DNA of 64,000 bases from Macrostomum lignano. Lineage: Eukaryota. The stretch is from NCBI GenBank assembly GCA_002269645.1, contig NIVC01000064.1:1-64000 (forward strand). Direction: 5' to 3'. Below the pieces are notes generated by a model. That model was given only the letters and a program-made list of their open reading frames with translations. It did not search any database and was not told where the DNA came from. How positions within the stretch are numbered: the first letter of the stretch is position 1; every line of letters begins with the position of its first letter. Position numbers and translations under genes: made by a program. Positions 21,388-53,280 of the stretch are shown piece after piece.

Positions 21388-21735
21388 CAGTGGCGTAGCC
21401 AGGAATTTCAATTGGGGGGGGGGTGGGTTGGCCTGGCTGGCCATGCCTCATGCCATTGCCATTGCCACTTTGCGCATACACCACACGCCACTCGGCATGC
21501 CTTACCATGCATAGTGATGCCACACCATAGTGCATGATGGCCAATGGCCCAATCCCAATGTTATGTTCAATGAGCGTAATCGTATTGTAATGGTATTACA
21601 TTGAATTGCATCATGGTTCCTTGTTCTCTCCAGTTTTGTATCATTTCCTTTCCAGAATTGCTATTCTATTTAAATACCCGCCGCGCCCAATCCCACCCTC
21701 CAGGGGCCCCTCCGGCCCCCCTGGCTACGCCACTG
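21388..21735. mobile_element. hAT-type MITE, 348 bp
   Basis: Perfect 15-bp TIR CAGTGGCGTAGCCAG / CTGGCTACGCCACTG and perfect 8-bp TSD CAGTCAAT (21380-21387, 21736-21743). Confidence 0.92.
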
Positions 21736-23454
21736 CAGTCAATTACATCAATTACAGTTTTGACACCCGTGTCGCATTTCTATACAGCTTGAAAAGCCAA
21801 AAATGCACAGAAAAACGACTTAAAAAGCCAAATCGAGCAGCTCAGCTGCTCTAAATGCATCCATTTTTTGAAAATTAGTTATATTCTTAAGCTCTTCCTT
21901 CTTGATGTAGCAAATGGTGAAAAAATAAAAAAATCAGATTTTCGAGTTTTCATGAGTGGAAAATAATGAGTCGAAAGTATCAATTGACTGAATTTAACTG
22001 ACAAACCAGATTATACGTGTACTGTGATCAATTACAACGAAACTCTTAGCGGTAGTGCTGTTCCTACATGTAAAGCTATTAGTTTTTTAAGTGAACTTAT
22101 AGCATTCTCCAAACTTTTTATAAATCAAAGTATGAAATGCAGTTCAGTATTTAATTGGCTTCTAGTACTATAAATAAGTAACGTTTTGTTAACTTTTATG
22201 CGCTTTTAAATGAGGGCAGCCCCGGTTCGGTAAGCCAGGCGTGCGCACGTGCGCACATTTTTGTTTGCGGGTGTGACACGACGTGTTCCCAGTTATCAAA
22301 CAAATTTGGACTTCATAGATAATAAAACTGACGTATCAGTTCTGAAAAGAAGACGTTGATTTTTACATTTAATTTCGTTCAAGCTTTAATTAATAGGTTT
22401 GCTTGGAGATTGCAACCAATGTGGTCTCAAAAATTAATTACTGCTGTGTCAGAAGTCAAACCATCATTCTTAGACATTAGCGACAGGTATATAAGACTAT
22501 TAAAATATTATGTTTAATTTTTGAGAATTGTGTGAAATTTTTCTCATTCTGTTTTTCTCTGGATATTGGGCGCAGTTTTGCTGCTATAATGCCCTTATGG
22601 TTAAACTTAAATTCAACTTCCTGGGGTGCAATTTAGAAATTTTCAATCAAATCAATAAAGTGGTATTCTACATAAAAAATCAAAAATGCAATTTCGTACT
22701 CAGAATAAGATAACTTTTGGTGCAGTTATGTAATTTTGGATGCTGTTTGCTTGTAATTGCTTGCACTACAATCTAGCTGTCATTTAATAATAGGTCTATA
22801 GACCTATAGATAGGCTCTATTTTCAATTATTAGAAATCCAAATCTAAATCTTGAAGTCATCCAATTTAGCTACATGCAGCCTATGCTGGTCTAGATTATG
22901 TCTAGTTCAAGTCAATGACAAATTCAATAGTGGCCATGGCCTAATTCAGTTGAGGCTAAAAAATTATAGTTTTACCTTGTTCTAAAATATTAGAAGAACT
23001 TTTGCATTTGGAATAACTTATTATTATTATTAAAAGGTTGCAAACAAAAAATGATGTCCAATTGGATACATCTTCTTTTCTACATTAAATGCATGTTGAC
23101 AATACTAAAAAGTGAGTCATTTTTTATATACAATATAATTCCTATTCCTATAAATACATGTAAGGCTTCCATTTTTTCTATGCTTATTTCTAGTAGTTGT
23201 TAAATATTCAAAGTTTCTTGTAGTAGCAAATATTCTTTAAAAATATTTAAATATATTTTAAGATATTTTGTCTTCTTATCTTATAATAGAAAACTATATG
23301 TTTAACTTTAATATTGGTTTTAATTATGCTAATTTATTAATAGCAAATATTCATTGAATCTATACAATCCTAAGATAATGAAGACCTCATAGTGATATTT
23401 GTATTAATTTCTAATTATCTACAAAAGTAAAAAATAAAAATCAGTTTTATAAGC

Positions 23455-23882
23455 AAGCTTCAAAGATTCTTAGTTGCTAAGCTAGTCTCCTAGATCCTTA
23501 GTTGTTGGGCTAATCTCCCAGTGTTAATTGCTAAGACAGTCTCCCAGATCCTTAGTTGCTAGGCCAGCCTTCTAGATCCTCAGTTGTTGGGCCAGCTTCT
23601 CATATCTTCAGTTGCTAGGTCAGGCTCCCAGGTCCTCAGTTGCTAGGCCAGCCTCCCAGATTCTCAGTTGCTAGGCCAGCCTCCCAGAGTGTCAGTTGCT
23701 AGGCCAGCCTCCCAGGCCTCAGTTGTTGGGCCAGCTTCTCATATCTTCAGTTGCTAGGTCAGGCTCCCAGGTCCTCAGTTGCTGGGCCAGCCTCCCAGAT
23801 CCTCAGTTGCTGGGCCAGCCTCCCAGATCCTCAGTTGCTGGGCCAGCCTCCCAGATCCTCATTTGCTGGGCCAGCCTCCCAC
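23455..23882. repeat. 28-bp minisatellite cctcccagatcctcagttgctgggccag, ~15 copies, left copies AT-shifted
   Basis: Directly visible; an inverted perfect array occurs at 53022-53165. Confidence 0.92.
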
Positions 23883-23909
23883 CTTTATTTCGACGCCTTC
23901 CAAACCCAG

Positions 23910-26900
23910 ATTTGTGTCGGCCCTTGATCGTCACGGCCAAGTGCACGTATTCGATGCCGCCTCCTGTGAGCGACTGCACACCTGCGACACCGGCTCGCCT
24001 GAACCAGCCACGGCTGTGGCTGTGCGACCTCCGCATCTGCTGATTGGCATTGAGGCCAAAGTGGAGCTGCGTACACTGCAAGACGACCTGCCAGATGGGC
24101 CGCTGACTCGGTTAGTGACTGACCCACTGGCTGGAATCTTCTGATATCTTCGAATGTGTTTATATAATATCGGTATATGCAGTTTCCACACACAAGTTTG
24201 TACATTAAATATCGATTAACTAAGTAGAATTTTTCGATTTAAGTTTATTCGATCTCAGGTAACAGTGCCAAAGTAGACGAGTAAACCTCCAAGCCAGCTT
24301 CAGATTGCCCCTCTGGGCCAGCTTCAGATTGTCCCTTCAGGCCAGCTTGAGATTTCCCTTCAGACCAGCTTCAGATTATCCCTTCAGGCCAGCTTCAGAT
24401 TATCCCTTCAGGCCAGCTTCAGATTATCCCTTCAGGCCAGCTTCAGATTATCCCTTCAGGCCAGCTTCAGATTATCCCTTCAGGCCAGCTTCAGATTGTC
24501 CCTTCAAGCCAGCTTCAGATTGTCCCTTCAGGCCAGCTTCAGATTATCCCTTCAGGCCAGCTTCAGATTGTCCCTTCAAGCCAGCTTCAGATTGTCCCTT
24601 CAGGCCAGCTTCAGATTATCCCTTCAGGCCAGCTTCAGATCATCCCTTCAGGCCAGCTTCAGATTGCCCTTCAGGCCAGCTTCAGATTGTCCCTTCAGGC
24701 CAGCTTCAGCTTGCTCCAACTCCCGTCTTCAGCTTCACGGCCAATGTTACGTGCATCTCGGCAGCGCAGTCTGGCCGTCTAGTTGGCATCGGTTCGGCCG
24801 ATTTCACCGCCAAAGTTATAGAACTAGACGATGGCGACTGCTACGTTGGCGAGGTGGCCCTCAAGGGTCATTCGGGGCCGCTGCTGTCAGTGGCTTTGGA
24901 TCCCGAAGGCGAGTTTTTTGCCACCTCAGCTTGCGACGGTACGGCCAGAATTTGGCAAGCTGCCAGTGGCAAACAGATCAAATCTTGGCCAGTTGCCAAG
25001 GCCTGTTCAGATCCCGCATTGGCCGCTAGTCCTTGTCCGCTGGTGTGGGAGCCCATGGCTGGCAGGCTGTTGGCTATGCCATTTGATTGCGAGCTGCGAC
25101 TGCTAGCCAGGTTTGACTTCTTTTGTTTGTTTATTGCTTTCTTTCAATAGGCTCGGTTCCAAGTGCAGTCACACTAATCTGGAATCTCGGCTTGGCTCTG
25201 CTCGTGCAATTAACGGCCTTGAGATCCAACCCCAAGGCATAGTGAAGTGTACATGCCTAACGATAAATAAAGTTAGGGCCGCTGTACACTCCTGTGTGTG
25301 TGCCTGTGCGTGTGACTGCGAACGTATCCGCGCGCTTGTGTGCCTGCTTAGGGGAGTCGGCGGAATGGGCGGCAATGCCTGTCGCCGGTTGTGTGACAAT
25401 GTGGCTTAAGGTGCGCCAGGGTGCACCTACTTCCACCTCAGATTCTGTTCAAAGTTTATCTTGTAATTAATTCCTTTTTAAATTATCCAAAATTAACATT
25501 AATTTTAAGACATGCCTAGTTGTTTGCCTAGAACCCTTCTGAAGTTTTTTCCTTTTTTCAACCATATCTTTCAGAGGAAATTCCTGGCCAGTTTCAGCAA
25601 CCTGCTCTAGCGACCAGCTTCGCGGCCCCATCCTCTGCTGCGTGTGGAGCCAGCAGGCCGACTTTATTGCCGCTGGAAGTCGAGATGGTGATTCCAAATT
25701 AATAATATATTTATCTGTTTCTGGAATTCCCCAGAATTCACTGGGTTTCCCCCGAAATCCATAGGGATTCCCCAGAATCTATTGGGATTCCCCAGAATCT
25801 ATTGGGATTCCCAGAATCTATTGGGATTCCCCAGAATCTATTGGGATTCCCAGAATCCATTGGGATTCCCCCAGAATCCATTGGATTCCCCAGAATCCAT
25901 TGGGGATTCCCCAGAATCTATTGGGATTCCCCAGAATCCACTGGGATACCTCCGAATCCACTGGAATTTTTCAGAATCCATTGGGATTCCCCAGAATCCA
26001 TTGGGATTCCCCAGAATCTATTTGGATTCCCCAGAATCCATTGGAATTCCCAGAATCCACTGGGATTCCTCAGAATCCACCCAAACAATTTTTTTCGCGC
26101 GGATTATTTCCCTTTAATTTGCAGTAGATTCTACCCTATCCAATTTAGTTCCATGAAGATGATTTCCATATTAATTGAAGCTATCAAACTCAATCCCAGG
26201 CGCCATCAGTGCCTGGTCAATCGCCTGGTCCGATGCGCCGCTACGCGAGGCCTCCCTACGCCAGGCGGCTCCCTACTTTGCTTTGCGCAGTCCCGGCCTG
26301 TGTCCGGTCAATCAGCTGTGCTGGTGGTGGCGCAGTCCGCAGGCTGGCGCGGCGGTGCAACCGGCTTTGGTCTATCTGGACGCTAAGGGAGACATTCGAA
26401 CTACGGAAGTGAGGAAGAACTGCTCCAGTAGGCCTCTGCAACAGCAGCAACAGCAGCAGCAACAACACCAGAAGCAGCTGACAGATGCGGAACTGCTGGC
26501 TGAAGCTGAGCTAGCCGACATTGATCCGCGCGACTTGGTGGACGAATTCGAAAGCGAAATGATGTCGTCTTCAGCGTCTCCAACAATTGCAGATAAAAAG
26601 CAGCAGAAGGGTGTTGCTTCTGTTGCTGCTACTACAAAAGAAGAAGACAATAGCGACAGCAACGCAGACAATTATGCGGACGATAACTCTTCTCTCAACC
26701 AAGACGAAGAGAAAGAGAATCGTAAAAGCGACGGCAAGAAAAAGAAGAAATCGAAGAAGCAGAAGAAAAAGAAGAAGACGGCCACTATAGGCAGCGATAG
26801 CAGCGGCAGTGAAAGCAGCAGCAGCAGTAGCGGAAGCGAATCCGAAGAGGAGAAAAATCGCCGCAAAGCAGCAGCCGGTTCGCCTCATCGAGCCCGCGCC

Positions 26901-29900
26901 AGCCAGCAGCGCCAACGACCTCTGCAGCCCGGCAGCACCAGCGGCTGTCCTCGCTATCTAGTGTGGAATCGCCTCGGCTGCGTCCTCGAGGCCGCCTCCG
27001 CTATGCCGGACCAGCCGCGGATTCTGTCCGTTGAATTTCACGACTCCGCTCTGCATCACGGCTTGCTCATTCCCAATGCTCACGGCTTCACTTTGGCCGC
27101 GCTCAGTCTGCGACTGCTGGCTTTGGCTGCTCCGTCGACGGCCGAGGCGCTCAGCTTCGTCCGCGTCCGACCGTTAAGCGGCAACGACGGCGGCGAGTAC
27201 GGAGGCGGCGCCGAGTGGACTCAGGCTTTGCCGCGCGGCGAAGATGCTGTTTGCTTGGCTGCTAGCGATAACAGATTGTTTGCCGGCTCCGACAGGTTTG
27301 TGTGTACTTTTGTATTGTTGATTTAAAGTGCATTTGTAATTTTTAAAATGGATTAAGTCCTTTAAAGTGCATTTTTACTTTTTAAAAGTGCATTGAATCT
27401 TCAAAGTGCATTCGTACTTTTTAAAAGTGCATTGAATACTTCAAAGTGCATTCGTACTTTTTAAAAGTGCATTGAATGCTTCAAAGTGCATTCGTACTTT
27501 TTAAAAGTGCATTGAATGCTTCAAAGTGCATTCGTACTTTTTAAAAGTGCATTGAATACTTCAAAGTGCATTCGTACTTTTTAAAAGTGCATTGAATGCT
27601 TCAAAGTGCATTCGTACTTTTTAAAAGTGCATTGAATGCTTCAAAGTGCATTCGTACTTTTTAAATGTGCATTTAATGCTTCAAAGTGCATTCGTACTTT
27701 TTAAAAGTGCATTGAATGCTTCAAAGTGCATTCGTACTTTTTAAAAGTGCATTGAATGCTTCAAAGTGCATTCGTACTTTTTAAAAGTGCATTTAATGCT
27801 TCAAAGTGCATTCGTACTTTTTAAAAGTGCATTGAATACTTCAAAGTGCATTCGTACTTTTTAAAAGTGCATTGAATGCTTCAAAGTGCATTCGTACTTT
27901 TTAAAAGTGCATTGAATACTTCAAAGTGCATTCGTACTTTTTAAAAGTGCATTGAATGCTTCAAAGTGCATTCGTACTTTTTAAAAGTGCATTTAATGCT
28001 TCAAAGTGCATTCGTACTTTTTAAAAGTGCATTTAATGCTTCAAAGTGCATTCGTACTTTTTAAAAGTGCATTGAATGCTTCAAAGTGCATTCGTACTTT
28101 TTAAAAGTGCATTGAATGCTTCAAAGTGCATTCGTACTTTTTAAAAGTGCATTTAATGCTTCAAAGTGCATTCGTACTTTTTAAAAGTGCATTGAATGCT
28201 TCAAAGTGCATTCGTACTTTTTAAAAGTGCATTGAATGCTTCAAAGTGCATTCGTACTTTTTAAAAGTGCATTTAATGCTTCAAAGTGCATTCGTACTTT
28301 TTAAAAGTGCATTGAATGCTTCAAAGTGCGTTCGTACTTTTTAAAAGTGCATTGAAAGCTTCAAAGTGCATTTGTACTTTTTAGAAGTGCATTAGGTCTT
28401 TAAATTGTATTAAATCCTTTAGAGGGCATTTGTACTTTTTAAAGTGCGTTTATTTAAAAGTGAGTTTGTACTTTTTAATGTGCGTTATTTCCTCTAAATG
28501 TACATTTTCACATTTTTGAAGTGCCCTGGTGCTTTTTAAAGGTGCTAGCGTACTTTTATCGAGTTTTAATTGTACTTTTCGGTGTGCGCATGCGCGGGCT
28601 TCGGATTCTGTGGCGTATGTACTATTTAAAAACTGATTTGTACCATCTTTGTCGAAAATGTCGAGTGTACTATTGCATAAGTCATGTATGTATGCTTATA
28701 ATACTTTTTTTTTTGCTTCCCATTTGCTACCTGTACTCATGTACACCATCCAGGCGCACGGTTCGAATTTGGTCCCATCGCGGGCTTCAACTAGCGGTGC
28801 TGTCAGCCCCCGGTCCCCTGATCTCGCTGTCAGCTTGGCCGCGTGGCTTCGCCGTCATCTACAATATCGGCGGAGGCTTCGTTGGGGCTGACGGAGACGA
28901 AGATGAAGATTGTCCAGTGGCTGCTGACCTGTTCGAGATGGCCGAATATCCGACACCTGGGGACTGGCCGGTGCCGAGGTAAATGCTTCGAGAGAGCGCC
29001 CAAGGGGGAGGGTTTCGTGCGATTCACAGCCGGCCAGATGTCAGATGTACTCGCTTGTACAGTCAGAGCTGCCAGAGTTTCATTAATTTATCCTTATTTT
29101 TGTTATGCGTCTTTACTTTTTATCATTTGTTATCCCTACTCACACCCATCTTCTTTTCGCCCCTAAGATAAAAATATTCTCAATTCTCAGCTCTCAGTTC
29201 TCTGGAGAAGGGCAGGCAAGGTCGACCGACTTGTGGAAGGCTGGGTCTAAGCGGCTCACAACACTTGAGGATCGGGCAACCAATCGGAATTGGATAGGCA
29301 AAGGGTACTTTGTGCCTGTGAAGTGTTGAGAGTTTTCATGGGCGGTTTAGGCTTACGTTGGTAGTTTTTGCCACCAGTCCCTTTGGGTCTCAGTCTTTGG
29401 TGAGGTGAGGATCACGTCGGAATGAAATAGCTCGTAAACAAGACGAATAGTCAGCAGATCCTGCCAGGCTCAGTGGGGCGACTGGGAGGACGGTGTTAGC
29501 CTCAGAGCAGACTCAGTCGTCTGGGTTTAGAATGAGAACTGATTCAAGACAATGGTAGGTAGATTTGTAGTTTCAGACACTCGTTGGGAACAGAGAATCT
29601 CAGGACAGAGGGAGAGAGAGAGAGCTGTGACGGAAACACGGCTGAGGGGGTCCGCACTTATAGCCTGGAGGAATCCCATTGCGTCGGAGCACGCAAGATA
29701 TCGCGTTGACGTGGTATCTATTTTTAGCAACTGACGTCAGTTCCTGCTTTAGAGAAGGCACGGACCAAATGTACAGTAAAGGTGTCTGGCTGTAGTGGCT
29801 TACTACATTTGCTACAACTATAATGATTATTACTGCTGTCTGTGCAACATCATTATTCCGAAAAATACCAACTTCAGACTAATGCGGTCCGAGGTTCGAA

Positions 29901-30583
29901 TCCCGCTCACGGCTCGCAGCCGTGTAGCCTGGCTTGGCCACTGCCAGCAGTCCGGTTCGCTCTGCGTCCAAGACAGTCACGGCGTTGTCCGAGCAATCCT
30001 GCCCGGTACGGGACTGGGCGCTTGGTGTCCGGTGTTAAACGGTCGCTCGGTACTTCCGGAACGAACTGACTGGCTGTGGCCGGTCGGCGTCAGCCTGTGT
30101 CCGCCTGCGGATTTCCGTCTAGCCGGCGTTCACTGCAAGAATTCGGCCGAGCCGTCCGCGCTGGCTGCTCGGCCGCCTATCCGCTACTATCCTCTGGCGC
30201 CGTTGCTGTGTCCGACTCCACTGTCCGAGCTGGAATCTCCTCTGTTCATGTCGGCCAGTTTCGGCCAGCTGTCCGGCCTTGGCGAGCAGCAGCTGCGCCT
30301 GTTCGCACAGGCGCTGAAATCTGGGGAAGAGTCCAGAGCTGTTGACGCGGCCGCTTGGATGTCGGAGCGGGTGCTCCGTCTGGCTATTCAATACGCTGTC
30401 AAGGCCAAGCGAGTGAAGCTGGTCGACCGACTGACTGCTATGGGCGAGGCGCTAATCGCTGGTAGAACTGCCGGCCCCGAGTCTGCAGCAGCCGCCGCCT
30501 CGCCCGCTGCTCCGGTAATCCAGCCGACACCTGTGAAACGGCGAAAACGCGAATCCTGCGAGCCGTCGTCTGTTGGCAAGTAG
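23910..30583 (+). CDS. WDHD1: WDHD1/And-1/Ctf4 (WD40 + SepB regions), 5' exon not found; exons 23910-24110, 24733-25110, 25575-25687, 26200-27295, 28754-28978, 29878-30583
   Basis: PDGPLTR|FTANVT matches And-1 PDGILTRFT. Also LKGHSGPLLSVALDPEGEFFATSACDG, LQPGST..RYLVWNRLG..VEFHDSALH, VAWLGH..DSHGVVR, W.PV, LFAQALKSGEESRAVD. Exon chain is frame-consistent (1+2718 nt). Confidence 0.92.
24293..24710. repeat. 24-bp minisatellite gccagcttcagattatcccttcag, ~17 copies (WDHD1 intron)
   Basis: Directly visible; produces the spurious RPASDYPF ORF. Confidence 0.93.
25150..25428 (+). mobile_element. Copy 1 of a SINE-like dispersed element (head- and tail-truncated)
   Basis: Aligns to the reverse complements of 52000-52295 and 37180-37365 (e.g. 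cgataaataaagttagggccgctgtacactcctgtg...ccggttgtgtgacaatgt...gggtgcac). Confidence 0.8.
25725..26075. repeat. ~20-21-bp minisatellite ttgggattccccagaatcta (WDHD1 intron)
   Basis: Directly visible. Confidence 0.9.
27325..28500. repeat. 40-bp dimeric satellite tcaaagtgcattcgtactttttaaaagtgcattgaatgct, ~27 copies (WDHD1 intron)
   Basis: Directly visible; built from two related 20-bp halves. Confidence 0.95.
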
Positions 30584-31314
30584 TTTAACAGGACTAATTT
30601 ATTTAATTATCTTTACTTTAACCTATTTTTTCTAATTTAGTTAGGTTGGTTTATTTTGCTGTACAACAAAAAATCATTCATATTCGTTACTTTCTACTCA
30701 TAAGCATTTTGCTCAGTAGTGCAGTCCGCACATTTTGTTTTAATTGCATTTTTTGCTTTTTTTCTCTGCATACAGTATAAAAATTGGTTGGCTTTGTAAC
30801 TGTGTAAAACAAAATCAATTTTATAACGATTGCAATTATAAAGGACTTTTTCTCAACTATACGATAATTAATGCATTTTTTATTCCTCTGAAATCGAAGC
30901 TGTTAAGCTTATCTGCTATTGTGCCAGTTCGGCAAATACAAGCGGATAATTAAAAAATTAATTGAACTGCTTTGTCAGTTGCTTAATTTAGTCTTTATTA
31001 AATAGCAATAAAATTGTGACTATTAGTGCGTTTGTACTTATTAACTATTAGCATAGATGTATGCAGTGGCTTCTTATAGCCCAGGCCTATAATTATATGT
31101 TGACGTATCTCTACCCAGCCCTACATCCGTGATGTGCGCCCCCCCCCCACCGCATCCCCATGCAAAATATCCGCGATAAAGTGAAGATAAGAAGTGGCTG
31201 CTTTTTTCAGCTCCACATACAGGATGCTACTGCAGGATCTCTACTATTTTTATATCTACCATCCTAATTAATTTTGTTTCTAAAGTTTATGCTTGCTTGG
31301 AGTTGTGAAGCTCG

Positions 31315-32035
31315 GTTAAGGATTGTGACGCTTTGGGGATTGTGACGCTTTGGGGATTGTGAAGCTTTCGGGATTGTGACGCTTTGGGGGAGTGTGAAGC
31401 TTTGGGGATTGTGAAGCTTTTAAGATTGTGAATGTTTGGAAATTGTGAAGCCTTGGGTGTTGTGAAACCTTGGGGATTGTGAAGCTTTGGGGGAGTGTGA
31501 AGCTTTGGGGATTGTGAAGCTTTTAAGATTGTGAATGTTTGGAAATTGTGAAGCCTTGGGTGTTGTGAAACCTTGGGGATTGTGAAGCTTTGAGGATTGT
31601 GAAGCTTTGAGGATTGTGAAGCTTTGGAGGGTTGTGAAGCTTTGAGGATTGTGAAGCTTTGGAGGGTTGTGAAGCTTTGAGGATTGTGAAGCTTTTAAGA
31701 TTGTGAATGTTTGGGAATTGTGAAGCCTTGAGGATTGTGAAGCTTTGAGGATTGTGAAGCTTTGGGGATTGTGAAGCCTTGGGAATTGTGAAGCCTTGGG
31801 TGTTGTGAAACCTTGGGGGTTGTGAAGCCTTGGGAATTGTGAAGCCTTGTGTGTTGTGAAACCTTGGGGGTTGTGAAGCCTTGGGAATTGTGAAGCCTTG
31901 TGTGTTGTGAAACCTTGGGGGTTGTGAAGCCTTGGGAATTGTGAAGCCTTGGGTGTTGTGAAACCTTGGGGTTGTGAAGCCTTGGGAATTGTGAAGCCTT
32001 GGGTGTTGTGAAACCTTGGGGATTGTGAAGCTTTT
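31315..32035. repeat. ~19-20-bp minisatellite ttgtgaagctttggggat
   Basis: Directly visible. Confidence 0.9.
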
Positions 32036-32821
32036 ATCGTAAAGCGTGTCTGATTAATTTATTTAAAATTAACTGATAAAATTGTGTCAAATGTCACAGT
32101 TATTCTTCTGCAGCTAAAGTAAATGTCCTTGTTGTTTCGCGGACAGTGAACGTTTTTTTCATATTTTCCAAGTCGCTATCCTTGATTCCTTGTGGTAATT
32201 TTTTTCTTTTTAGCTAATAAGTACAGGGCTAGTGGTGTACAGATGTTTGTGTATTGTTAAGGTTTTATGGTGTACGTGGAGGCTAAGGGCTGGAACTGGA
32301 GAATCTTTTTAAGTTTCAATTGCTCTTTATATTAGTCTTGTTGCAATGGCTTTAAAGACCTCTTAAAATACGAGTGGAGCCTAATGTAGTTTCCAATCCA
32401 TGTTTTCTTAAGGGTCCCCGGCGCTACCTTTTCAACTGCTGTCGACAATTGGCAACAAGCCGTGGCGCGTTTGCCTCTTCTATTTTCTTCTTTTGGGCTT
32501 ACTTTTGCATTATGAGAATGAATATTATAGGGAAATAGCTTGTTTTTGCTGAGGCAAAATAGCAGTAAATTATAAAATCTTGCAAAGATCCGGTACAAAT
32601 AGGTTACGAAATCTAGGTGCCACTGTTATTGCCTATTTCTTTTTTCCTTTTCTCCAGGGCTCTAGTCTCTGCCCGCCCTCCTAGATACTATGTTAACCTT
32701 CTTAACCTGCCCGTGTAAACCTTTATTGCTTACTCTTATCTCCGCGTCTGTTTCCTGTTTATTTCATTCAGGGTCTTAGGTACTGTCCCCTGTATTCTCT
32801 GTCTCCCTCTCCGTCTCTCCC

Positions 32822-33240
32822 GTAGCCTCCCCTCAGCCTCCTCCCTCCCCTCAGCCTCCCCTCAGCCTCCTCTCTCCCCTCAGCCTCCCCTCAGCCTCCC
32901 CTCAGTCTCCTCCTTCCCTCAGCCTCCCCTCAGCCTCCCCTCAGCCTCCTTCCTCCCCTCAGCCTCCTTCCTCCCCTCAGCCTCCTTCCTCCCCTCAGCC
33001 TCCTTCCTCCCCTCAGCCTCCTCTCTCCCTCAGCCTCCCCTCAGCCTCCCCTCAGTCTCCTCCTTCCCTCAGCCTCCCCTCAGCCTCCCCTCAGCCTCCT
33101 TCCTCCCCTCAGCCTCCTTCCTCCCCTCAGCCTCCTTCCTCCCCTCAGCCTCCTTCCTCCCCTCAGCCTCCTTCCTCCCCTCCGCCTCTTTCCTCCCCTC
33201 AGCCTCCCCTCAGCCTCCTCTCTCCCCTTGGCCTCCTCCC
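32822..33240. repeat. C-rich repeat (cctcccctcagcct)n
   Basis: Directly visible. Confidence 0.9.
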
Positions 33241-34193
33241 TTAGCTAGGGATCTCACCTAGTAAAGCTTTCATGTCCCACCTGTGTATACAATGAAACAG
33301 TAAAGAACGGATGCAAGTGCACCAATGTTTTGGCTAGCAAGTAATAATTATTACACAAAGTCTTTAAAAACCAAGCCAAAGAGAATAGCAGTGAAATGAA
33401 AATCGATAATTTTTTATCATGTCCTGTAAGCTACAGCTGTCTGCGGATATACTGATACTGTATTTAGAAACTCTAGTATGTATGTACATGTACGGTTATT
33501 TCTTTCACTTTAAATTAAAAACAGGACAAGCAGCCAAGGCCAGATAGAAAGGCCCTATGCAGACAGACAAGCCACTACACTACGGTTCTTTTCTGCGAAT
33601 GCAAGTCGAACTCCGAGATTTTGTGCACTCGCGGCGGCGGGTGACATGCGGATATTATTTTAAGAAAAATAAATGCCTCACTCGCTCTGCACCCGCCCCA
33701 GACTACACTCTCCGGCTCCACCCCGTGTGTGTGTATACTTAGTTAAAACTCGTTAACCAAAATTCTCTCTCTCCCTATCCTTCCACACCGAGCTTGGTTT
33801 TGACGCGGACATGAAATTCTCTCTCTCTCTCTCTCTCTCCCTCCTATCTCAGCCGCCTGTGTGTGTGCTTCTTGCAGCAAAAACGAAGCCTTTAGTATTA
33901 TAATACCTTCCTACTTATTAGGCTAGAGTCTCTCTCCTTAGCGCTCGCTCCGCCTTATGCAAACCAGAAACTTGCGAATGTACATACACAGCCACTCGCT
34001 AGAGGTTGGCATCTAATCTTATACCCTTGCTATTTTCTGCCTGCGGCCAACCCCGCCCGCAGCCCAATTGCCATCCGCAATGTAATATAGTATATAATCT
34101 CAGTAGAGAAGGCAGAAACGCAACAGTAAAAGAAAAACTGACTTGAGAACTTGCAGCAACAGTAGAATTCCGTGCTCACAGTTATAAACCACC

Positions 34194-36059: not shown

Positions 36060-37135
36060 CATGAGTCATTAGTGATTGTATATGAGCTCATTAAACACTT
36101 TTAGCTACATAAATGAGTCATTAGTGATTTTATAAGCTCATTACACACTTTTAGCTACAGAAATGAGTCATTAGTGATTTTGTGAGCTCATTACACTTTT
36201 AGCTACAGAAATAAGTCATTAGTGATTGTATATGAGCTCATTAAACACTTTTAGCTACAGAAATGATGCATTAGTGATTTTTATGAGCTCATTACACACT
36301 TTTAGCTACATAAATGAGTCATTAGTGATTTTATGAGCCCATTAAACACTTTTAGCTACAGAAATGATGCATTGGTGATTTTTATGAGCTTATTACACAC
36401 TTTTAGCTACATAAATGAGTCATTACTGGTTTGTGAGCTCATTACACTTTTAGCTACAGAAATGAGTCATTAGTGATTTGTGAGCTCATTACACTTTTAG
36501 CTACATAAATGAGTCATTACTGATTTTATGAACTCATTACACACTTTTAGCTACATAAATGAGTCATTACTGATTTTATGAACTAATTACACACTTTTAG
36601 CTACATAAATGAGTCATTAGTGATTTGTGAGCTCATTACACTTTTAGCTACATAAATGAGCCATTAGTGATTTTGTGAGCTCATTACACTTTTAGCTACA
36701 TAAATGAGTCATTAGTGATTTTGTGAGCTCATTACACTTTTAGCTACAGAAACGAGTCATTAGTGATTTGTGAGCTCATTACACTTTTAGCTACAGAAAT
36801 GAGTCATTAGTGATTTGTGAGCTCATTACACATTTTTAGCTACATAAATGAGTCATTAGTAATTTTATGAGCTCATTACACACTTTTAGCTACATAAATG
36901 AGTCATTAGTGATTTTATGAGCTCATTACACACTTTTAGCTACATAAATGAGTCAGTACTGATTTTGTGAGCTCATTACACTTTTAGCTACAGAAATGAG
37001 TCTTTAGTGATTTTTTGATCTCATTAAACTGTTAGCCACAGAAAATAAGTCATTTTTTTATCTTATTACAATTAGCTACAAAAGTGTCATTAGTGATAGT
37101 ATGATCTCATTATAGTTTTAACTATTTGTGAGTCA
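36060..37135. repeat. ~46-48-bp satellite gctacagaaatgagtcattagtgattttgtgagctcattacactttta, ~22 copies
   Basis: Directly visible; a short array of the same unit occurs at 51810-51965. Confidence 0.93.
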
Positions 37136-37375
37136 TTTGCCATATCTATGTTTATTTTCATTATCAGAGACAGTAGCTGTGTGCACCCCGGCGGCGCACT
37201 TTAAGCGACATTGTCACACAACCGGCGAGAGGCATTACTGCTCATTCCGCAGACTCCCCTGAGCAGGCACACAAGCTCACGGATACGTACGCAGTCACAC
37301 GCACAGGCACACACTCACACAGGAGTGCACAGCGGCCCTGACTTTATTTATCGTTAGGCATTTACACTTTGCGGC
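37135..37375 (-). mobile_element. Copy 2 of the SINE-like element (head-truncated, joined to the satellite)
   Basis: Near-identical to 51965-52190, including the linker tgtgagtcatttgccat. Confidence 0.8.
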
Positions 37376-38391: not shown

Positions 38392-40930
<2,539 letters not shown>

Positions 40931-51759: not shown

Positions 51760-52345
51760 TGGCATTACTGCACATTCCTCAGACTCCTTTGAGCAGGCAA
51801 ACAAGCTACAGAAACGAGTCATTAGTGATTTTATGAGCTCATTACACTTTTAGCTACAGAAATGAGTCATTAGTGATTTTGTGAGCTCATTACACTTTAG
51901 CTACAGAAATGAGTCATTAGTGATTGTATGATCGCATTTTTGTTTTAACTAGTTGTGAGTCATTTGCCATGTTTATTTTGATTTTTAGTGGCAGGGGCTG
52001 TGTGCACCCTGGCGCACTTTCAGCGACATTGTCACACAACCGGCGAGAGGCATTACTGCCCATTCCGCCGACTCCCCTGAGCAGGCACACGAGCGCGCGG
52101 ATACGTACGCAGTCACACGCACAGGCACACACTCACACAGGAGTGTACAGCGGCCCTGACTTTATTTATCGTTAGGCATGTACACTTCCCTGTGCCTGGG
52201 GGTTGGCGCTCAAGGCCGTTAATTGCACGAGCAGAGCCAAGCCGAGATTCCAATTTAGCCTCAAAATTAATGTGACTGCACTGGGAATCGAGCCTGGGAC
52301 CGCTGGCACACCAGAGCGGCCCAAGATACAAGCTATCAGCCACGC
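51760..52345 (-). mobile_element. Copy 3 (most complete) of the SINE-like element: tRNA-like head ~52345-52275, body, ~47-bp satellite tail, extra body fragment
   Basis: Minus strand has GGCTGATAGC...GGTCCCAGGCTCGATTCCCAG (B-box-like), then the body shared with copies 1 and 2, then ~3 satellite units. Confidence 0.7.
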
Positions 52346-53021
52346 CTTAACTCCAACTCTTCCTTTGATGCTTGGACTACCAACAACTCCCAACTGACCC
52401 TTGGTATCTGAGCACCTCCCCCCGCTATGAGCCACAGCATTTCAGCGACCCCCGTGAGCTTTGACATCTCAGCAATTCTCGAAATAAAGAAAAACTCGAA
52501 AAAGCTACTAGTTAGTTTTGCACTTTTAGTATAATCGCATCAACTGGTAGTTTGATATATAGAGCTGAGTCTTTCAATTATGAGTATTGCTGTTGTCAGT
52601 GGAGCTGAGTGGAGTATCAGGTGGATCAAGTGGAGCATCCCCGTTCGCTGCATCAGCAGCCACTTGCCACAGAGCTGCACTCGACCAGAGCCAAAAAGCC
52701 TGTCAAGTGGAAAATTCCATTAAAAATGGGCACTTAGTGTCAAATATGAATTTCTGTGGCCAGAATTCTCCACTTAATTGGTTTTTAATGTATTAGAGAG
52801 CAGAGCCCTCAACAGCTTGGATTCAACCTAAACGCGTAAATAAATCCACTTAACTAAGAAAAGCAATGGATAAAACAATCAGTAGGGAGAAAGTTTTTAA
52901 TATATTTTAGTCTGGTTAATATCGATTAAGCATCGCAAACACCATTTTTAGATGCAAAAAGAACTTAAAATCACAGAGCTTGCACAGAATCTTCAATTGG
53001 CCTTTATTTAGAACTGAAAAC

Positions 53022-53165
53022 AGAGGATCTGGGAGGCTGGCCCAGCAACTGAGGATCTGGGAGGCTGGCCCAGCAACTGAGGATCTGGGAGGCTGGCCCA
53101 GCAACTGAGGATCTGGGAGGCTGGCCCAGCAACTGAGGATCTGGGAGGCTGGCCCAGCAACTGAT
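53022..53165. repeat. 28-bp minisatellite (inverse of 23455-23882), ~5 perfect copies just downstream of the ASCC1 stop
   Basis: gaggatctgggaggctggcccagcaact repeated. Confidence 0.93.
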
Positions 53166-53280
53166 GATAACTCTAAAAAATCAATACAGATAGAGAATTG
53201 TGCACAAGCTGTATGCAAAAATCGATCAAAACAAAAGACTGGAGCACAACTGCCAAATCATGGGCTACTCGGTCAGAATG

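What the first reader, a model, noticed from the sequence alone, without database searches (positions are those of the whole stretch)
22697..23890. 1.2-kb CpG-free tract ending in a repeat with a gradient of non-CpG C>T/G>A changes: RIP-like or deamination footprint
Seen: no CG dinucleotide from 22697 to 23890, although flanking intergenic DNA has them regularly; GC falls to ~14% at 23221-23340. The 28-bp array (consensus has no CpG) decays leftward almost only by C>T and G>A: unit 1 cttcaaagattcttagttgctaagctag, unit 2 tctcctagatccttagttgttgggctaa (6 changes, all C>T/G>A), versus perfect cctcccagatcctcagttgctgggccag on the right and at 53022-53165. Known: RIP in fungi and cytidine deaminases leave such two-strand transition footprints; RIP is not established in animals. 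Inference: a localised, directional hypermutation process. Ordinary AT-biased decay of array edges is the null model.
Basis: partly seen in the sequence, partly recalled or inferred. Interest (0 to 1): 0.75.

Follow-up and report, generated by a model that had tools for sequence, protein, structure and literature searches.

The report
CpG-free flatworm intron with ageing minisatellite
The CpG-free 1.2 kb is two unrelated things lying side by side in the first intron of the flatworm Macrostomum lignano WDHD1 gene: a 28-bp tandem repeat whose older end has drifted towards A/T, and an unusually A/T-rich stretch that has lost almost all its CpGs. Neither part passes the tests for a fungal-style (RIP) or deaminase hypermutation.

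Summary
In detail: there is no CG from 22696 to 23891, GC is 14% at 23221-23340, and the 28-bp array decays leftward. The window is Macrostomum lignano, and the tract lies inside WDHD1 intron 1 (22487-23909).

The tract has two parts.

- **The array (23458-23881).** Its unit has no CpG, so it is CpG-free by construction, like three longer arrays in the window.
- **The unique DNA (22487-23457).** GC is 26% and it holds 2 CpG against about 16 expected (P about 2e-5). Unique DNA elsewhere in the window has CpG o/e of about 0.94, even where it is AT-rich. This depletion is the real anomaly.

A purine/pyrimidine test shows the AT-rich DNA is not a decayed extension of the array.

In the array, 39 of 53 substitutions are C>T or G>A. 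Variants shared by neighbouring units and a duplicated 5-unit block point to gradual ageing of one end. The GC-to-AT bias is only nominally stronger than in other GC-rich arrays (p 0.01-0.3, depending on how ancestral states are assigned).

The RIP tests fail: there is no CpA/TpG depletion and CpA dominance is 0.35-0.70. 29% of the window is intact homogeneous repeats, and other arrays' flanks look normal. The only context-specific loss is CpG, which fits 5mC deamination in a locally methylated patch. M. lignano keeps DNMT1 and DNMT3. That step is inferred, not shown. Interest is low to moderate.

The parts
22419..22486 (+). WDHD1 (AND-1/Ctf4) exon 1 coding part, ATG at 22419, GT donor at 22487
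   Evidence: Spliced exon 1 plus exon 2 is identical to the first 90 residues of UniRef A0A1I8HEU4 (Macrostomum lignano) except S21N. The sequence was read.
22487..23909 (+). WDHD1 intron 1 (1423 nt). The whole finding lies inside it.
   Evidence: GT at 22487-8 and AG at 23908-9. The exon junction is confirmed by P0001. Pfam WD40_WDHD1_1st, Mcl1_mid and Ctf4_C match the downstream exons.
22487..23457 (.). Unique, AT-rich, CpG-depleted segment: GC 26%, 2 CpGs (22571, 22695) against 16.6 expected, CpG o/e 0.12, GpC o/e 1.81. This is the real anomaly.
   Evidence: There is no second copy in the window, no Pfam relic in six frames, no Rfam hit reaching a family's gathering score (one chance-level match outside the tract), no 28-nt periodicity, and no phage or plasmid match beyond chance hits of 53-73 nt, all within the AT-richest core.
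23221..23340 (.). GC minimum (14.2%), with overlapping AT-rich palindromes at 23227-23270
   Evidence: I1, I3.
23458..23881 (+). 28-bp minisatellite: 15 units plus a 7-nt partial unit. The family unit is CCTCCCAGATCCTCAGTTGCTGGGCCAG (64% GC, no CpG).
   Evidence: TRF; unit parsing.
23458..23539 (+). The three most decayed units (8, 6 and 9 differences; GC 36-43%). Units 1-4 share T14 and units 2-4 share T1.
23568..23846 (+). Duplicated 5-unit block (139-nt period): units 5-9 and units 10-14. Units 6 and 11 are identical, including 6 variant positions.
   Evidence: TRF period 139, 89% matches.
23791..23846 (+). Two perfect family units at the homogenised, exon-proximal end
23910..24110 (+). WDHD1 exon 2. 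CpGs resume at 23891, 19 nt before the acceptor.
53019..53168 (-). Second array of the same 28-bp family (5.4 units, 4 of them perfect). It has different phase boundaries and non-homologous flanks.

Best explanation
The 1.2-kb CpG-free run is a juxtaposition of two features inside intron 1 of Macrostomum lignano WDHD1. (a) The first is a 28-bp minisatellite from a dispersed family whose unit has no CpG. It turns over at its exon-proximal end through unit and 5-unit block duplication, which keeps that end uniform and GC-rich. The distal (left) units have dropped out of homogenisation and evolve like single-copy DNA under the genome's AT-biased mutation. A 64%-GC unit therefore ages mainly by C>T and G>A. 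(b) The second is an unrelated, old, AT-rich single-copy intron segment that has lost its CpGs and no other cytosine context. The most likely cause is spontaneous deamination of 5-methylcytosine in a small patch that is methylated in the germline, in a genome that is otherwise barely methylated. Shown: the anatomy, the statistics, and the failure of the RIP and deaminase signatures. Inferred: polar turnover as the cause of the gradient, and methylation as the cause of the CpG loss.
For: Two components: purine/pyrimidine identity to the unit falls from 26/28 to chance level at 23458, and there is no 28-nt periodicity upstream. Array turnover: units 13-14 are perfect, units 5-9 are duplicated as 10-14, and units 6 and 11 are identical. 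Gradual ageing rather than one burst: T14 is shared by units 1-4 and T1 by units 2-4, on top of private changes numbering 6, 4, 6 and 0 in units 1-4. The spectrum of the three left units (17 C>T/G>A against 6 other) does not differ from the rest of the array (22 against 11, p = 0.77). Decayed ends are common in the window's other arrays. AT-biased background: rare, and so probably derived, variants in the other 23 arrays give a per-site GC>AT to AT>GC ratio of 2.2. That predicts 80% GC>AT for this unit; the observed 20 of 22 distinct events gives p = 0.15. The share of C>T/G>A among distinct variants is 0.56, against 0.39 in the other arrays with unit GC of 0.5 or more (p = 0.14). CpG-specific loss: symmetrised odds ratios in the tract versus the rest of the unique DNA are CpG 0.12 vs 0.94, CpA/TpG 1.14 vs 1.09, CpC/GpG 1.11 vs 0.89, GpC 1.81 vs 1.33. 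The CpG/(TpG+CpA) index is 0-0.02 against 0.17-0.27 in six control segments, five of them AT-rich. AT-rich unique DNA elsewhere keeps its CpGs (o/e 1.0-1.35 at GC 0.30-0.35). M. lignano retains DNMT1 and DNMT3 and has low-level 5mC of unknown pattern (PMC11292947, PMC9246332, PMC10658182).
Against: No methylation data and no orthologous or paralogous intron could be reached, so neither the age of the tract nor the direction of its substitutions is shown. The expected TpG/CpA excess from CpG decay is not detectable (1.14 vs 1.09). A methylated patch 65 nt downstream of the start codon of an essential replication gene is not where invertebrate gene-body methylation usually sits. If the array is polarised on its GC-richest unit, its GC>AT bias is nominally stronger than in the other GC-rich arrays (S>W to W>S of 23:2 against 71:36, p = 0.013; transitions 15:1 against 51:25, p = 0.034). 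All 11 C sites are hit but only 4 of 7 G sites (p = 0.04). A locally raised AT bias that also affects non-CpG cytosines is therefore not excluded.
Confidence: 0.55

Rival explanations
1. One reading: a localised RIP-like or cytidine-deaminase hypermutation is triggered by the repeat, spreads into flanking unique DNA, and converts C>T and G>A on both strands.
For: 74% of array substitutions are C>T or G>A, and these drive the gradient (rho -0.85). The window's most AT-rich unique DNA abuts the decayed end. In the fungus S. nodorum the terminal unit of the rDNA array is the one hit by RIP (PMC2621366), so an edge effect has a precedent. The array's GC>AT bias is nominally above that of other GC-rich arrays (p 0.013-0.034).
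Against: The RIP indices are negative (substrate index 1.34-1.49). CpA dominance is 0.35-0.70 and there is no TpC bias. Mutations of both strands are intermixed within units. Shared variants show that mutation was interleaved with unit duplication. The AT-rich tract is not mutated array. The homogeneous units, the 53-kb copy and the other 22 arrays analysed (29% of the window is tandem arrays) are untouched, and their flanks are normal. Context-blind deamination predicts about 12 surviving CpGs, not 0.
Confidence: 0.07
2. The AT-rich segment is an insertion, such as a degraded transposable element or other transferred DNA, that was already AT-rich and CpG-poor when it arrived. Its position next to the array is coincidental.
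For: It stands apart from all other unique DNA in both GC and CpG. The window holds dispersed TE-like repeats and a MITE-like element.
Against: There is no second copy in the window, and no terminal repeats were found around it. There is no protein-domain relic, no Rfam hit reaching a family's gathering score and no open reading frame under the flatworm mitochondrial code. There is no phage or plasmid match beyond chance hits of 53-73 nt, all within the AT-richest core. Apart from CpG and GpC, its dinucleotide signature resembles the rest of the window.
Confidence: 0.18
3. A patch methylated in all cytosine contexts: dense CpG plus non-CpG methylation over roughly 22.5-23.6 kb. Deamination of 5mC removed every CpG, lowered GC in the unique DNA, and also drove the C>T and G>A changes in the adjacent old array units.
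For: One mechanism would cover the CpG loss, the low GC and the nominal excess of GC>AT changes in the array. DNMT1 and DNMT3 are present in the species (PMC9246332). One study, as summarised in the review PMC10658182, describes non-CpG as the dominant methylation context in another flatworm, Taenia solium.
Against: No non-CpG context is depleted in the tract. The array excess depends on polarisation (p 0.15-0.33 with the rare-variant expectation). There are no methylation data.
Confidence: 0.1
4. No special process: ordinary AT-rich neutral intron DNA in which CpGs are absent by chance or through functional constraint (for example an AT-rich regulatory or structural element).
For: The region was picked after the fact from a scan. 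AT-rich DNA has few CpGs anyway.
Against: P = 9e-6 to 2e-5 per segment, which is about 1e-3 after allowing for roughly 60 independent segments. Other AT-rich segments have CpG o/e of 1.0-1.35.
Confidence: 0.07

Closest known systems
Minisatellites with polar turnover and degenerate terminal repeats (variant repeats in blocks, activity biased to one end)
   Same: Head-to-tail 28-bp units, block and higher-order duplication, a uniform end and a diverged end, and a dispersed family with a second array 30 kb away. Block organisation of variant repeats and a suggested end bias (not statistically significant there) are described for the human MSY1 minisatellite (PMC2599865). Polarity at the GC-rich human minisatellites rests on my own knowledge of the classic literature. 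Several other arrays in this window show the same one-sided decay.
   Different: No population or germline instability data are available here. The decay is more AT-directed than the window average if it is polarised on the GC-richest unit.
CpG depletion by 5-methylcytosine deamination in methylated DNA (vertebrate bulk DNA; methylated compartments of mosaic invertebrate genomes)
   Same: Only CpG is depleted (o/e 0.12), while GpC and the other cytosine dinucleotides are not. The host has DNMT1 and DNMT3 and low-level 5mC (PMC11292947).
   Different: It is an isolated patch of about 1 kb in the first intron rather than a whole gene body or a recognisable transposon. Methylation of the locus has not been shown, and the TpG/CpA excess is not measurable.
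Fungal repeat-induced point mutation (RIP), including leakage into flanks and RIP of the terminal rDNA unit (PMC2621366, PMC3105345)
   Same: G:C to A:T transitions on both strands of a repeat copy at an array end, next to AT-rich DNA.
   Different: There is no CpA>TpA preference and the indices are negative. Homogeneous repeats are abundant and intact. The flanking AT-rich DNA is not derived from the repeat. The host is an animal with no known RID-type pathway.
APOBEC/AID-type clustered deamination (kataegis)
   Same: A local excess of C>T and G>A.
   Different: The changes are not strand-coordinated, there is no TpC or WRC preference, and the changes are nested with unit duplications, so they accumulated over time.

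Membership tests
RIP (repeat-induced point mutation) | Differences between repeat copies are dominated by C:G to T:A transitions | tested here: met
   39 of 53 substitutions against the family unit. The share among distinct variants (0.56) does not differ significantly from other GC-rich arrays (0.39, p = 0.14).
RIP (repeat-induced point mutation) | Dinucleotide preference (CpA>TpA in most fungi): TpA/ApT of 0.89 or more together with (CpA+TpG)/(ApC+GpT) of 1.03 or less; CpA dominance above 1.2 | tested here: not met
   The substrate index is 1.34-1.49 in the tract and 2.21 in the array. TpA/ApT is 0.95-1.0, the same as AT-rich controls. CpA dominance is 0.70, or 0.35 without site 22 (criteria from PMC2621366).
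RIP (repeat-induced point mutation) | Acts on all sizeable duplicated DNA (about 400 bp or more, about 80% identity or more), mutating every copy | tested here: not met
   24 arrays were analysed (29% of the window is tandem arrays), and in most of them TRF reports 90-98% matches between adjacent units (range 77-98%). They include CpG-containing units, the right end of this array and its 53-kb copy. Other arrays' flanks have normal GC and CpG.
RIP (repeat-induced point mutation) | RID-type cytosine methyltransferase homologue acting before meiosis | not testable with these tools
   No M. lignano genome or proteome was reachable beyond one UniRef entry.
APOBEC/AID clustered deamination | Strand-coordinated clusters (runs of C>T or of G>A) in a TpC or WRC context | tested here: not met
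   Units 1-3 carry C>T and G>A counts of 4 and 2, 5 and 1, and 2 and 3, intermixed. TpC sites make up 3 of 18 sites and carry 8 of 39 mutated cells (p = 0.52).
5mC-deamination footprint (germline-methylated DNA) | CpG observed/expected far below the local background while GpC and other C dinucleotides are not depleted | tested here: met
   CpG 0.12 against 0.94, GpC 1.81 against 1.33, CpA/TpG 1.14 against 1.09. P = 2e-5.
5mC-deamination footprint (germline-methylated DNA) | Compensating excess of TpG/CpA | tested here: inconclusive
   1.14 against 1.09. About 16 lost CpGs are too few to detect against about 90 TpG/CpA.
5mC-deamination footprint (germline-methylated DNA) | The organism has DNMT1 and DNMT3, and the locus is methylated in the germline | not testable with these tools
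   The enzymes and low-level 5mC are reported in the literature (PMC11292947, PMC9246332, PMC10658182). Methylation of this locus is unknown.
Minisatellite with polar turnover / edge decay | Tandem units with evidence of recent duplication or homogenisation at one end and increasing divergence towards the other | tested here: met
   Perfect units 13-14, a duplicated 5-unit block, and rho -0.77 (p = 8e-4) for divergence against position.
Minisatellite with polar turnover / edge decay | Germline length instability or polymorphism | not testable with these tools
   No reads, alleles or paralogues were available.

The most novel reading that the evidence does not exclude
The tract marks one of the rare germline-methylated islands of the sparsely methylated M. 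lignano genome. Cytosine methylation there, possibly in non-CpG contexts too, would have erased every CpG and pulled both the unique DNA and the adjoining old minisatellite units towards A/T. That would be a methylation-driven local mutational sink in an animal, similar in outcome to fungal RIP or MIP but not in mechanism.
Probability: 0.12. Interest if true: 0.55.

Novelty: new member of a known kind. Interest (0 to 1): 0.2.

Why it matters
For the claim as filed, RIP-like hypermutation in an animal, the result is negative, and that removes what would have been a striking finding. What remains is modest but concrete. The genome-wide methylation pattern of M. lignano had not been described as of the 2022 review PMC9246332, although the species keeps DNMT1 and DNMT3. 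A 1-kb segment with CpG o/e of 0.12, set in DNA at about 0.94, is a sequence-level candidate for where that methylation sits, or once sat. A genome-wide scan for such tracts would be a cheap predictor to compare with bisulfite or long-read methylation calls. The analysis also gives a first local estimate of the AT-biased mutation spectrum, from rare variants in minisatellites (GC>AT to AT>GC of about 2.2 per site).

Tried and rejected
- **Hidden decayed array in the AT-rich tract.** A scan in the purine/pyrimidine alphabet, both in register and in any phase, plus autocorrelation, gave nothing above shuffles.
- **Shared transposon carrying both 28-bp arrays.** Only the array itself is shared. 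The flanks are not homologous, even at word size 7. A separate 290-bp dispersed repeat lies 0.7-1.3 kb away at both loci, but the intervening DNA is unrelated.
- **Other copies of the AT-rich tract in the window.** There are none.
- **Mitochondrial or transposon coding relic.** Each frame has 19-38 stops and the longest ORF under the flatworm mitochondrial code is 69 codons. There are no Pfam hits in six frames.
- **Structured RNA or SINE head.** No Rfam hit reached a family's gathering score (one chance-level snoRNA match at E = 1, upstream of the tract).
- **Phage or plasmid origin.** Only chance hits of 53-73 nt, all within the AT-richest core of the tract.
- **Reaching paralogous or orthologous introns.** Two searches of the protein database returned one M. 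lignano UniRef entry and no genomic context. The encoding-contig look-up found nothing.
- **Wasik et al. 2015, the primary methylation data.** The paper is not held in the library.
- **Array-linked AT-rich flanks as a general phenomenon.** This is not seen at the other 23 arrays.
- **Transcription-coupled strand asymmetry.** C>T at 27/165 against G>A at 12/105 is not significant (p = 0.29). G and C are equal in the tract (128 against 126).
Full report
**What and where**

[quoted passage not shown] ORFs downstream carry the Pfam domains WD40_WDHD1_1st, Mcl1_mid and Ctf4_C.

- Exon 1 coding sequence is 22419-22486.
- Intron 1 is 22487-23909.
- Exon 2 is 23910-24110.

The whole finding lies inside intron 1, which begins 68 nt after the first base of the start codon.

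**Checking the observation**

- No CG occurs from 22696 to 23891.
- GC is 14.2% at 23221-23340.
- The flanks carry CpGs at o/e of 0.8-1.0.
- The 28-bp array (23458-23881) has 15 units. Their differences from the right-end unit run 8,6,9,3,3,6,3,2,4,3,6,2,0,0,1 (rho -0.77, p = 8e-4).
- The same perfect unit occurs four times on the minus strand at 53037-53148.

A CpG-free run of 1.2 kb is not in itself unusual here. It is the fourth longest, and the three longer ones are arrays whose unit lacks CpG. 29% of the window is tandem arrays. Simple and tandem repeats together make up 15% of the M. lignano genome (PMC5730564).

**The tract has two unrelated parts**

The array is CpG-free by construction. 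Left of 23458 the sequence is not a decayed array. In a purine/pyrimidine alphabet, which transitions cannot change, identity to the unit falls from 26/28 in unit 1 to 14-19/28. The best any-phase score does not exceed shuffles, and there is no 28-nt periodicity.

The unique part is the real anomaly.

- 22697-23455 has 0 CpG against 12.4 expected, and 22487-23457 has 2 against 16.6 (P = 9e-6 and 2e-5).
- It is the only one of 593 unmasked 759-nt windows with 2 or fewer CpGs, and also the lowest in GC.
- Elsewhere, unique DNA has CpG o/e of 0.9-1.0 in every GC class. AT-rich segments (GC 0.30-0.35) have 1.0-1.35. AT-richness alone therefore does not explain the loss.

**What kind of loss it is**

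Symmetrised dinucleotide odds ratios, tract against the rest of the unique DNA:

| Dinucleotide | Tract | Rest of unique DNA |
|---|---|---|
| CpG | 0.12 | 0.94 |
| CpA/TpG | 1.14 | 1.09 |
| CpC/GpG | 1.11 | 0.89 |
| GpC | 1.81 | 1.33 |
| TpA | 0.92 | 0.79 |

Only CpG is depleted. The two classical RIP indices are negative. (CpA+TpG)/(ApC+GpT) is 1.34-1.49, whereas RIP requires 1.03 or less. TpA/ApT is 0.95-1.0, the same as AT-rich control segments at 0.77-1.05 (thresholds and CpA preference from PMC2621366).

A context-blind deaminase that lowered GC to 26% would still leave about 12 CpGs at the present composition.

**The array**

Against the family unit, 39 of 53 substitutions are C>T or G>A. 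There are 2 A>G changes, 12 transversions and 3 indels. Several observations argue for slow ageing rather than a burst.

- T14 is shared by units 1-4 and T1 by units 2-4, so these changes predate unit duplications.
- Units 5-9 are duplicated as units 10-14. Units 6 and 11 are identical, including six variant sites.
- The spectrum of the three left units (17:6) matches the rest of the array (22:11, p = 0.77).
- C>T and G>A are intermixed within each unit.
- 15 of the 18 G/C sites are hit without context preference. CpA dominance is 0.70, or 0.35 without site 22. That site is A in 8 of 15 units and may be ancestral in this array. There is no TpC enrichment.

**Comparison with the null**

One-sided or two-sided terminal decay is common among the window's other arrays. 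Rare variants in the other 23 arrays give a per-site GC>AT to AT>GC ratio of 2.2. For a 64%-GC unit this predicts 80% GC>AT. The observed 20 of 22 distinct events gives p = 0.15, or 0.33 if site 22 is polarised by majority.

The comparison with other arrays of unit GC 0.5 or more is mixed.

- The share of C>T and G>A among distinct variants is 0.56 against 0.39 (p = 0.14).
- The strong-to-weak against weak-to-strong contrast is nominally significant (23:2 against 71:36, p = 0.013; transitions 15:1 against 51:25, p = 0.034).

With TRF's own consensus the array even shows 25 GC>AT against 31 AT>GC transitions, so the direction depends on polarisation. The 53-kb copy supports a GC-rich ancestor. 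It is itself young (98% matches between its units), however, and could derive from the same recently expanded variant.

My reading is that the array is an ordinary ageing edge. It may be ageing in a locally more AT-biased neighbourhood. There is no evidence for hypermutation.

**Is the process repeat-linked?**

No. The homogeneous units of this array, its second copy and the other 22 arrays analysed are intact, including several with CpG in the unit. The 300-nt flanks of the other arrays have GC of 0.26-0.61 and normal CpG counts, also next to decayed ends.

**What the AT-rich tract is not**

- It has no second copy in the window and no terminal repeats.
- It has no ORF or Pfam relic and no Rfam hit reaching a family's gathering score (one chance-level match outside the tract).
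- It has no phage or plasmid similarity beyond chance hits of 53-73 nt, all within the AT-richest core of the tract.

**Most likely mechanism**

1. **The gradient.** Polar minisatellite turnover keeps the exon-proximal end uniform, while the distal units age under AT-biased mutation. The anatomy is shown; the process is inferred. It is a known kind of behaviour. PMC2599865 describes block structure in a human minisatellite, with a suggested but non-significant end bias. The classic polarity literature I cite from my own knowledge.
2. **The CpG loss.** CpG-specific loss in the unique segment most likely reflects 5mC deamination in a small germline-methylated patch. M. lignano, unlike planarians and parasitic flatworms, retains DNMT1 and DNMT3 and has low-level 5mC, and its methylation pattern had not been described as of the 2022 review (PMC11292947, PMC9246332, PMC10658182). 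This step is inferred. Methylation of the locus, and the age and direction of change in the tract, could not be tested. No M. lignano genomic DNA other than the window was reachable.

**Rivals**

- Insertion of DNA that was already CpG-poor: 0.18.
- A patch methylated in all cytosine contexts that also drives the array's decay: 0.10. This is the most novel reading not excluded.
- RIP-like or deaminase hypermutation: 0.07.
- Chance or functional constraint: 0.07.

**Verdict**

It is a new instance of known kinds of feature. Interest is low to moderate. Its main value is as a sequence-level pointer to where the uncharted M. lignano methylation may act.

Noticed in passing
window 22238-22256: A palindromic GGCGTGCGCACGTGCGCAC motif (NRF1-site-like, by my recollection of the consensus) sits in a short GC-rich island about 165 nt upstream of the WDHD1 start codon. 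It is a candidate core promoter element.
   Followed up: no
window 21388-21735: Perfect 16-nt inverted repeats (CAGTGGCGTAGCCAGG / CCTGGCTACGCCACTG) lie 316 nt apart in the intergenic DNA between the SLC22-like transporter gene and WDHD1. This looks like a MITE-like element (I5).
   Followed up: no
window 25149-25426 (-), 52002-52295, 37121-37369; arrays 36061-37054 and 51804-51938: A dispersed repeat of about 290 bp (88-92% identity) is joined, at two of its three copies, to a 49/50-bp minisatellite. It looks like a TE-like element carrying its own array. At both loci holding the 28-bp array, this repeat lies 0.7-1.3 kb away in the same relative order and orientation, although the DNA between them is not homologous.
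   Followed up: partly
window 22487-34000 (WDHD1 introns) and the whole window: Several successive WDHD1 introns in this stretch each carry a different minisatellite, with units of 28, 24, 20, 40 and 17 bp. Tandem arrays cover 29% of the window, against 15% for simple plus tandem repeats genome-wide (PMC5730564). There is also a 990-bp (TAAC)n tract at 39647-40636.
   Followed up: partly
window 23458-23909: Each array unit contains pyrimidine-rich stretches ending in CAG (CCTCCCAG, CCTCAG, GGCCAG), and the array ends 28 nt before the true intron 1 acceptor. This gives dozens of acceptor-like decoy sites just upstream of exon 2.
   Followed up: no
window 24111 onwards, against UniRef A0A1I8HEU4: After exon 2, the public 137-aa protein model no longer matches the exon 3 inferred here. 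Its tail instead matches the start of the frame at about 26200-26340. It also differs by S21N. It is probably a mis-spliced or truncated model from another copy or allele of the gene.
   Followed up: partly
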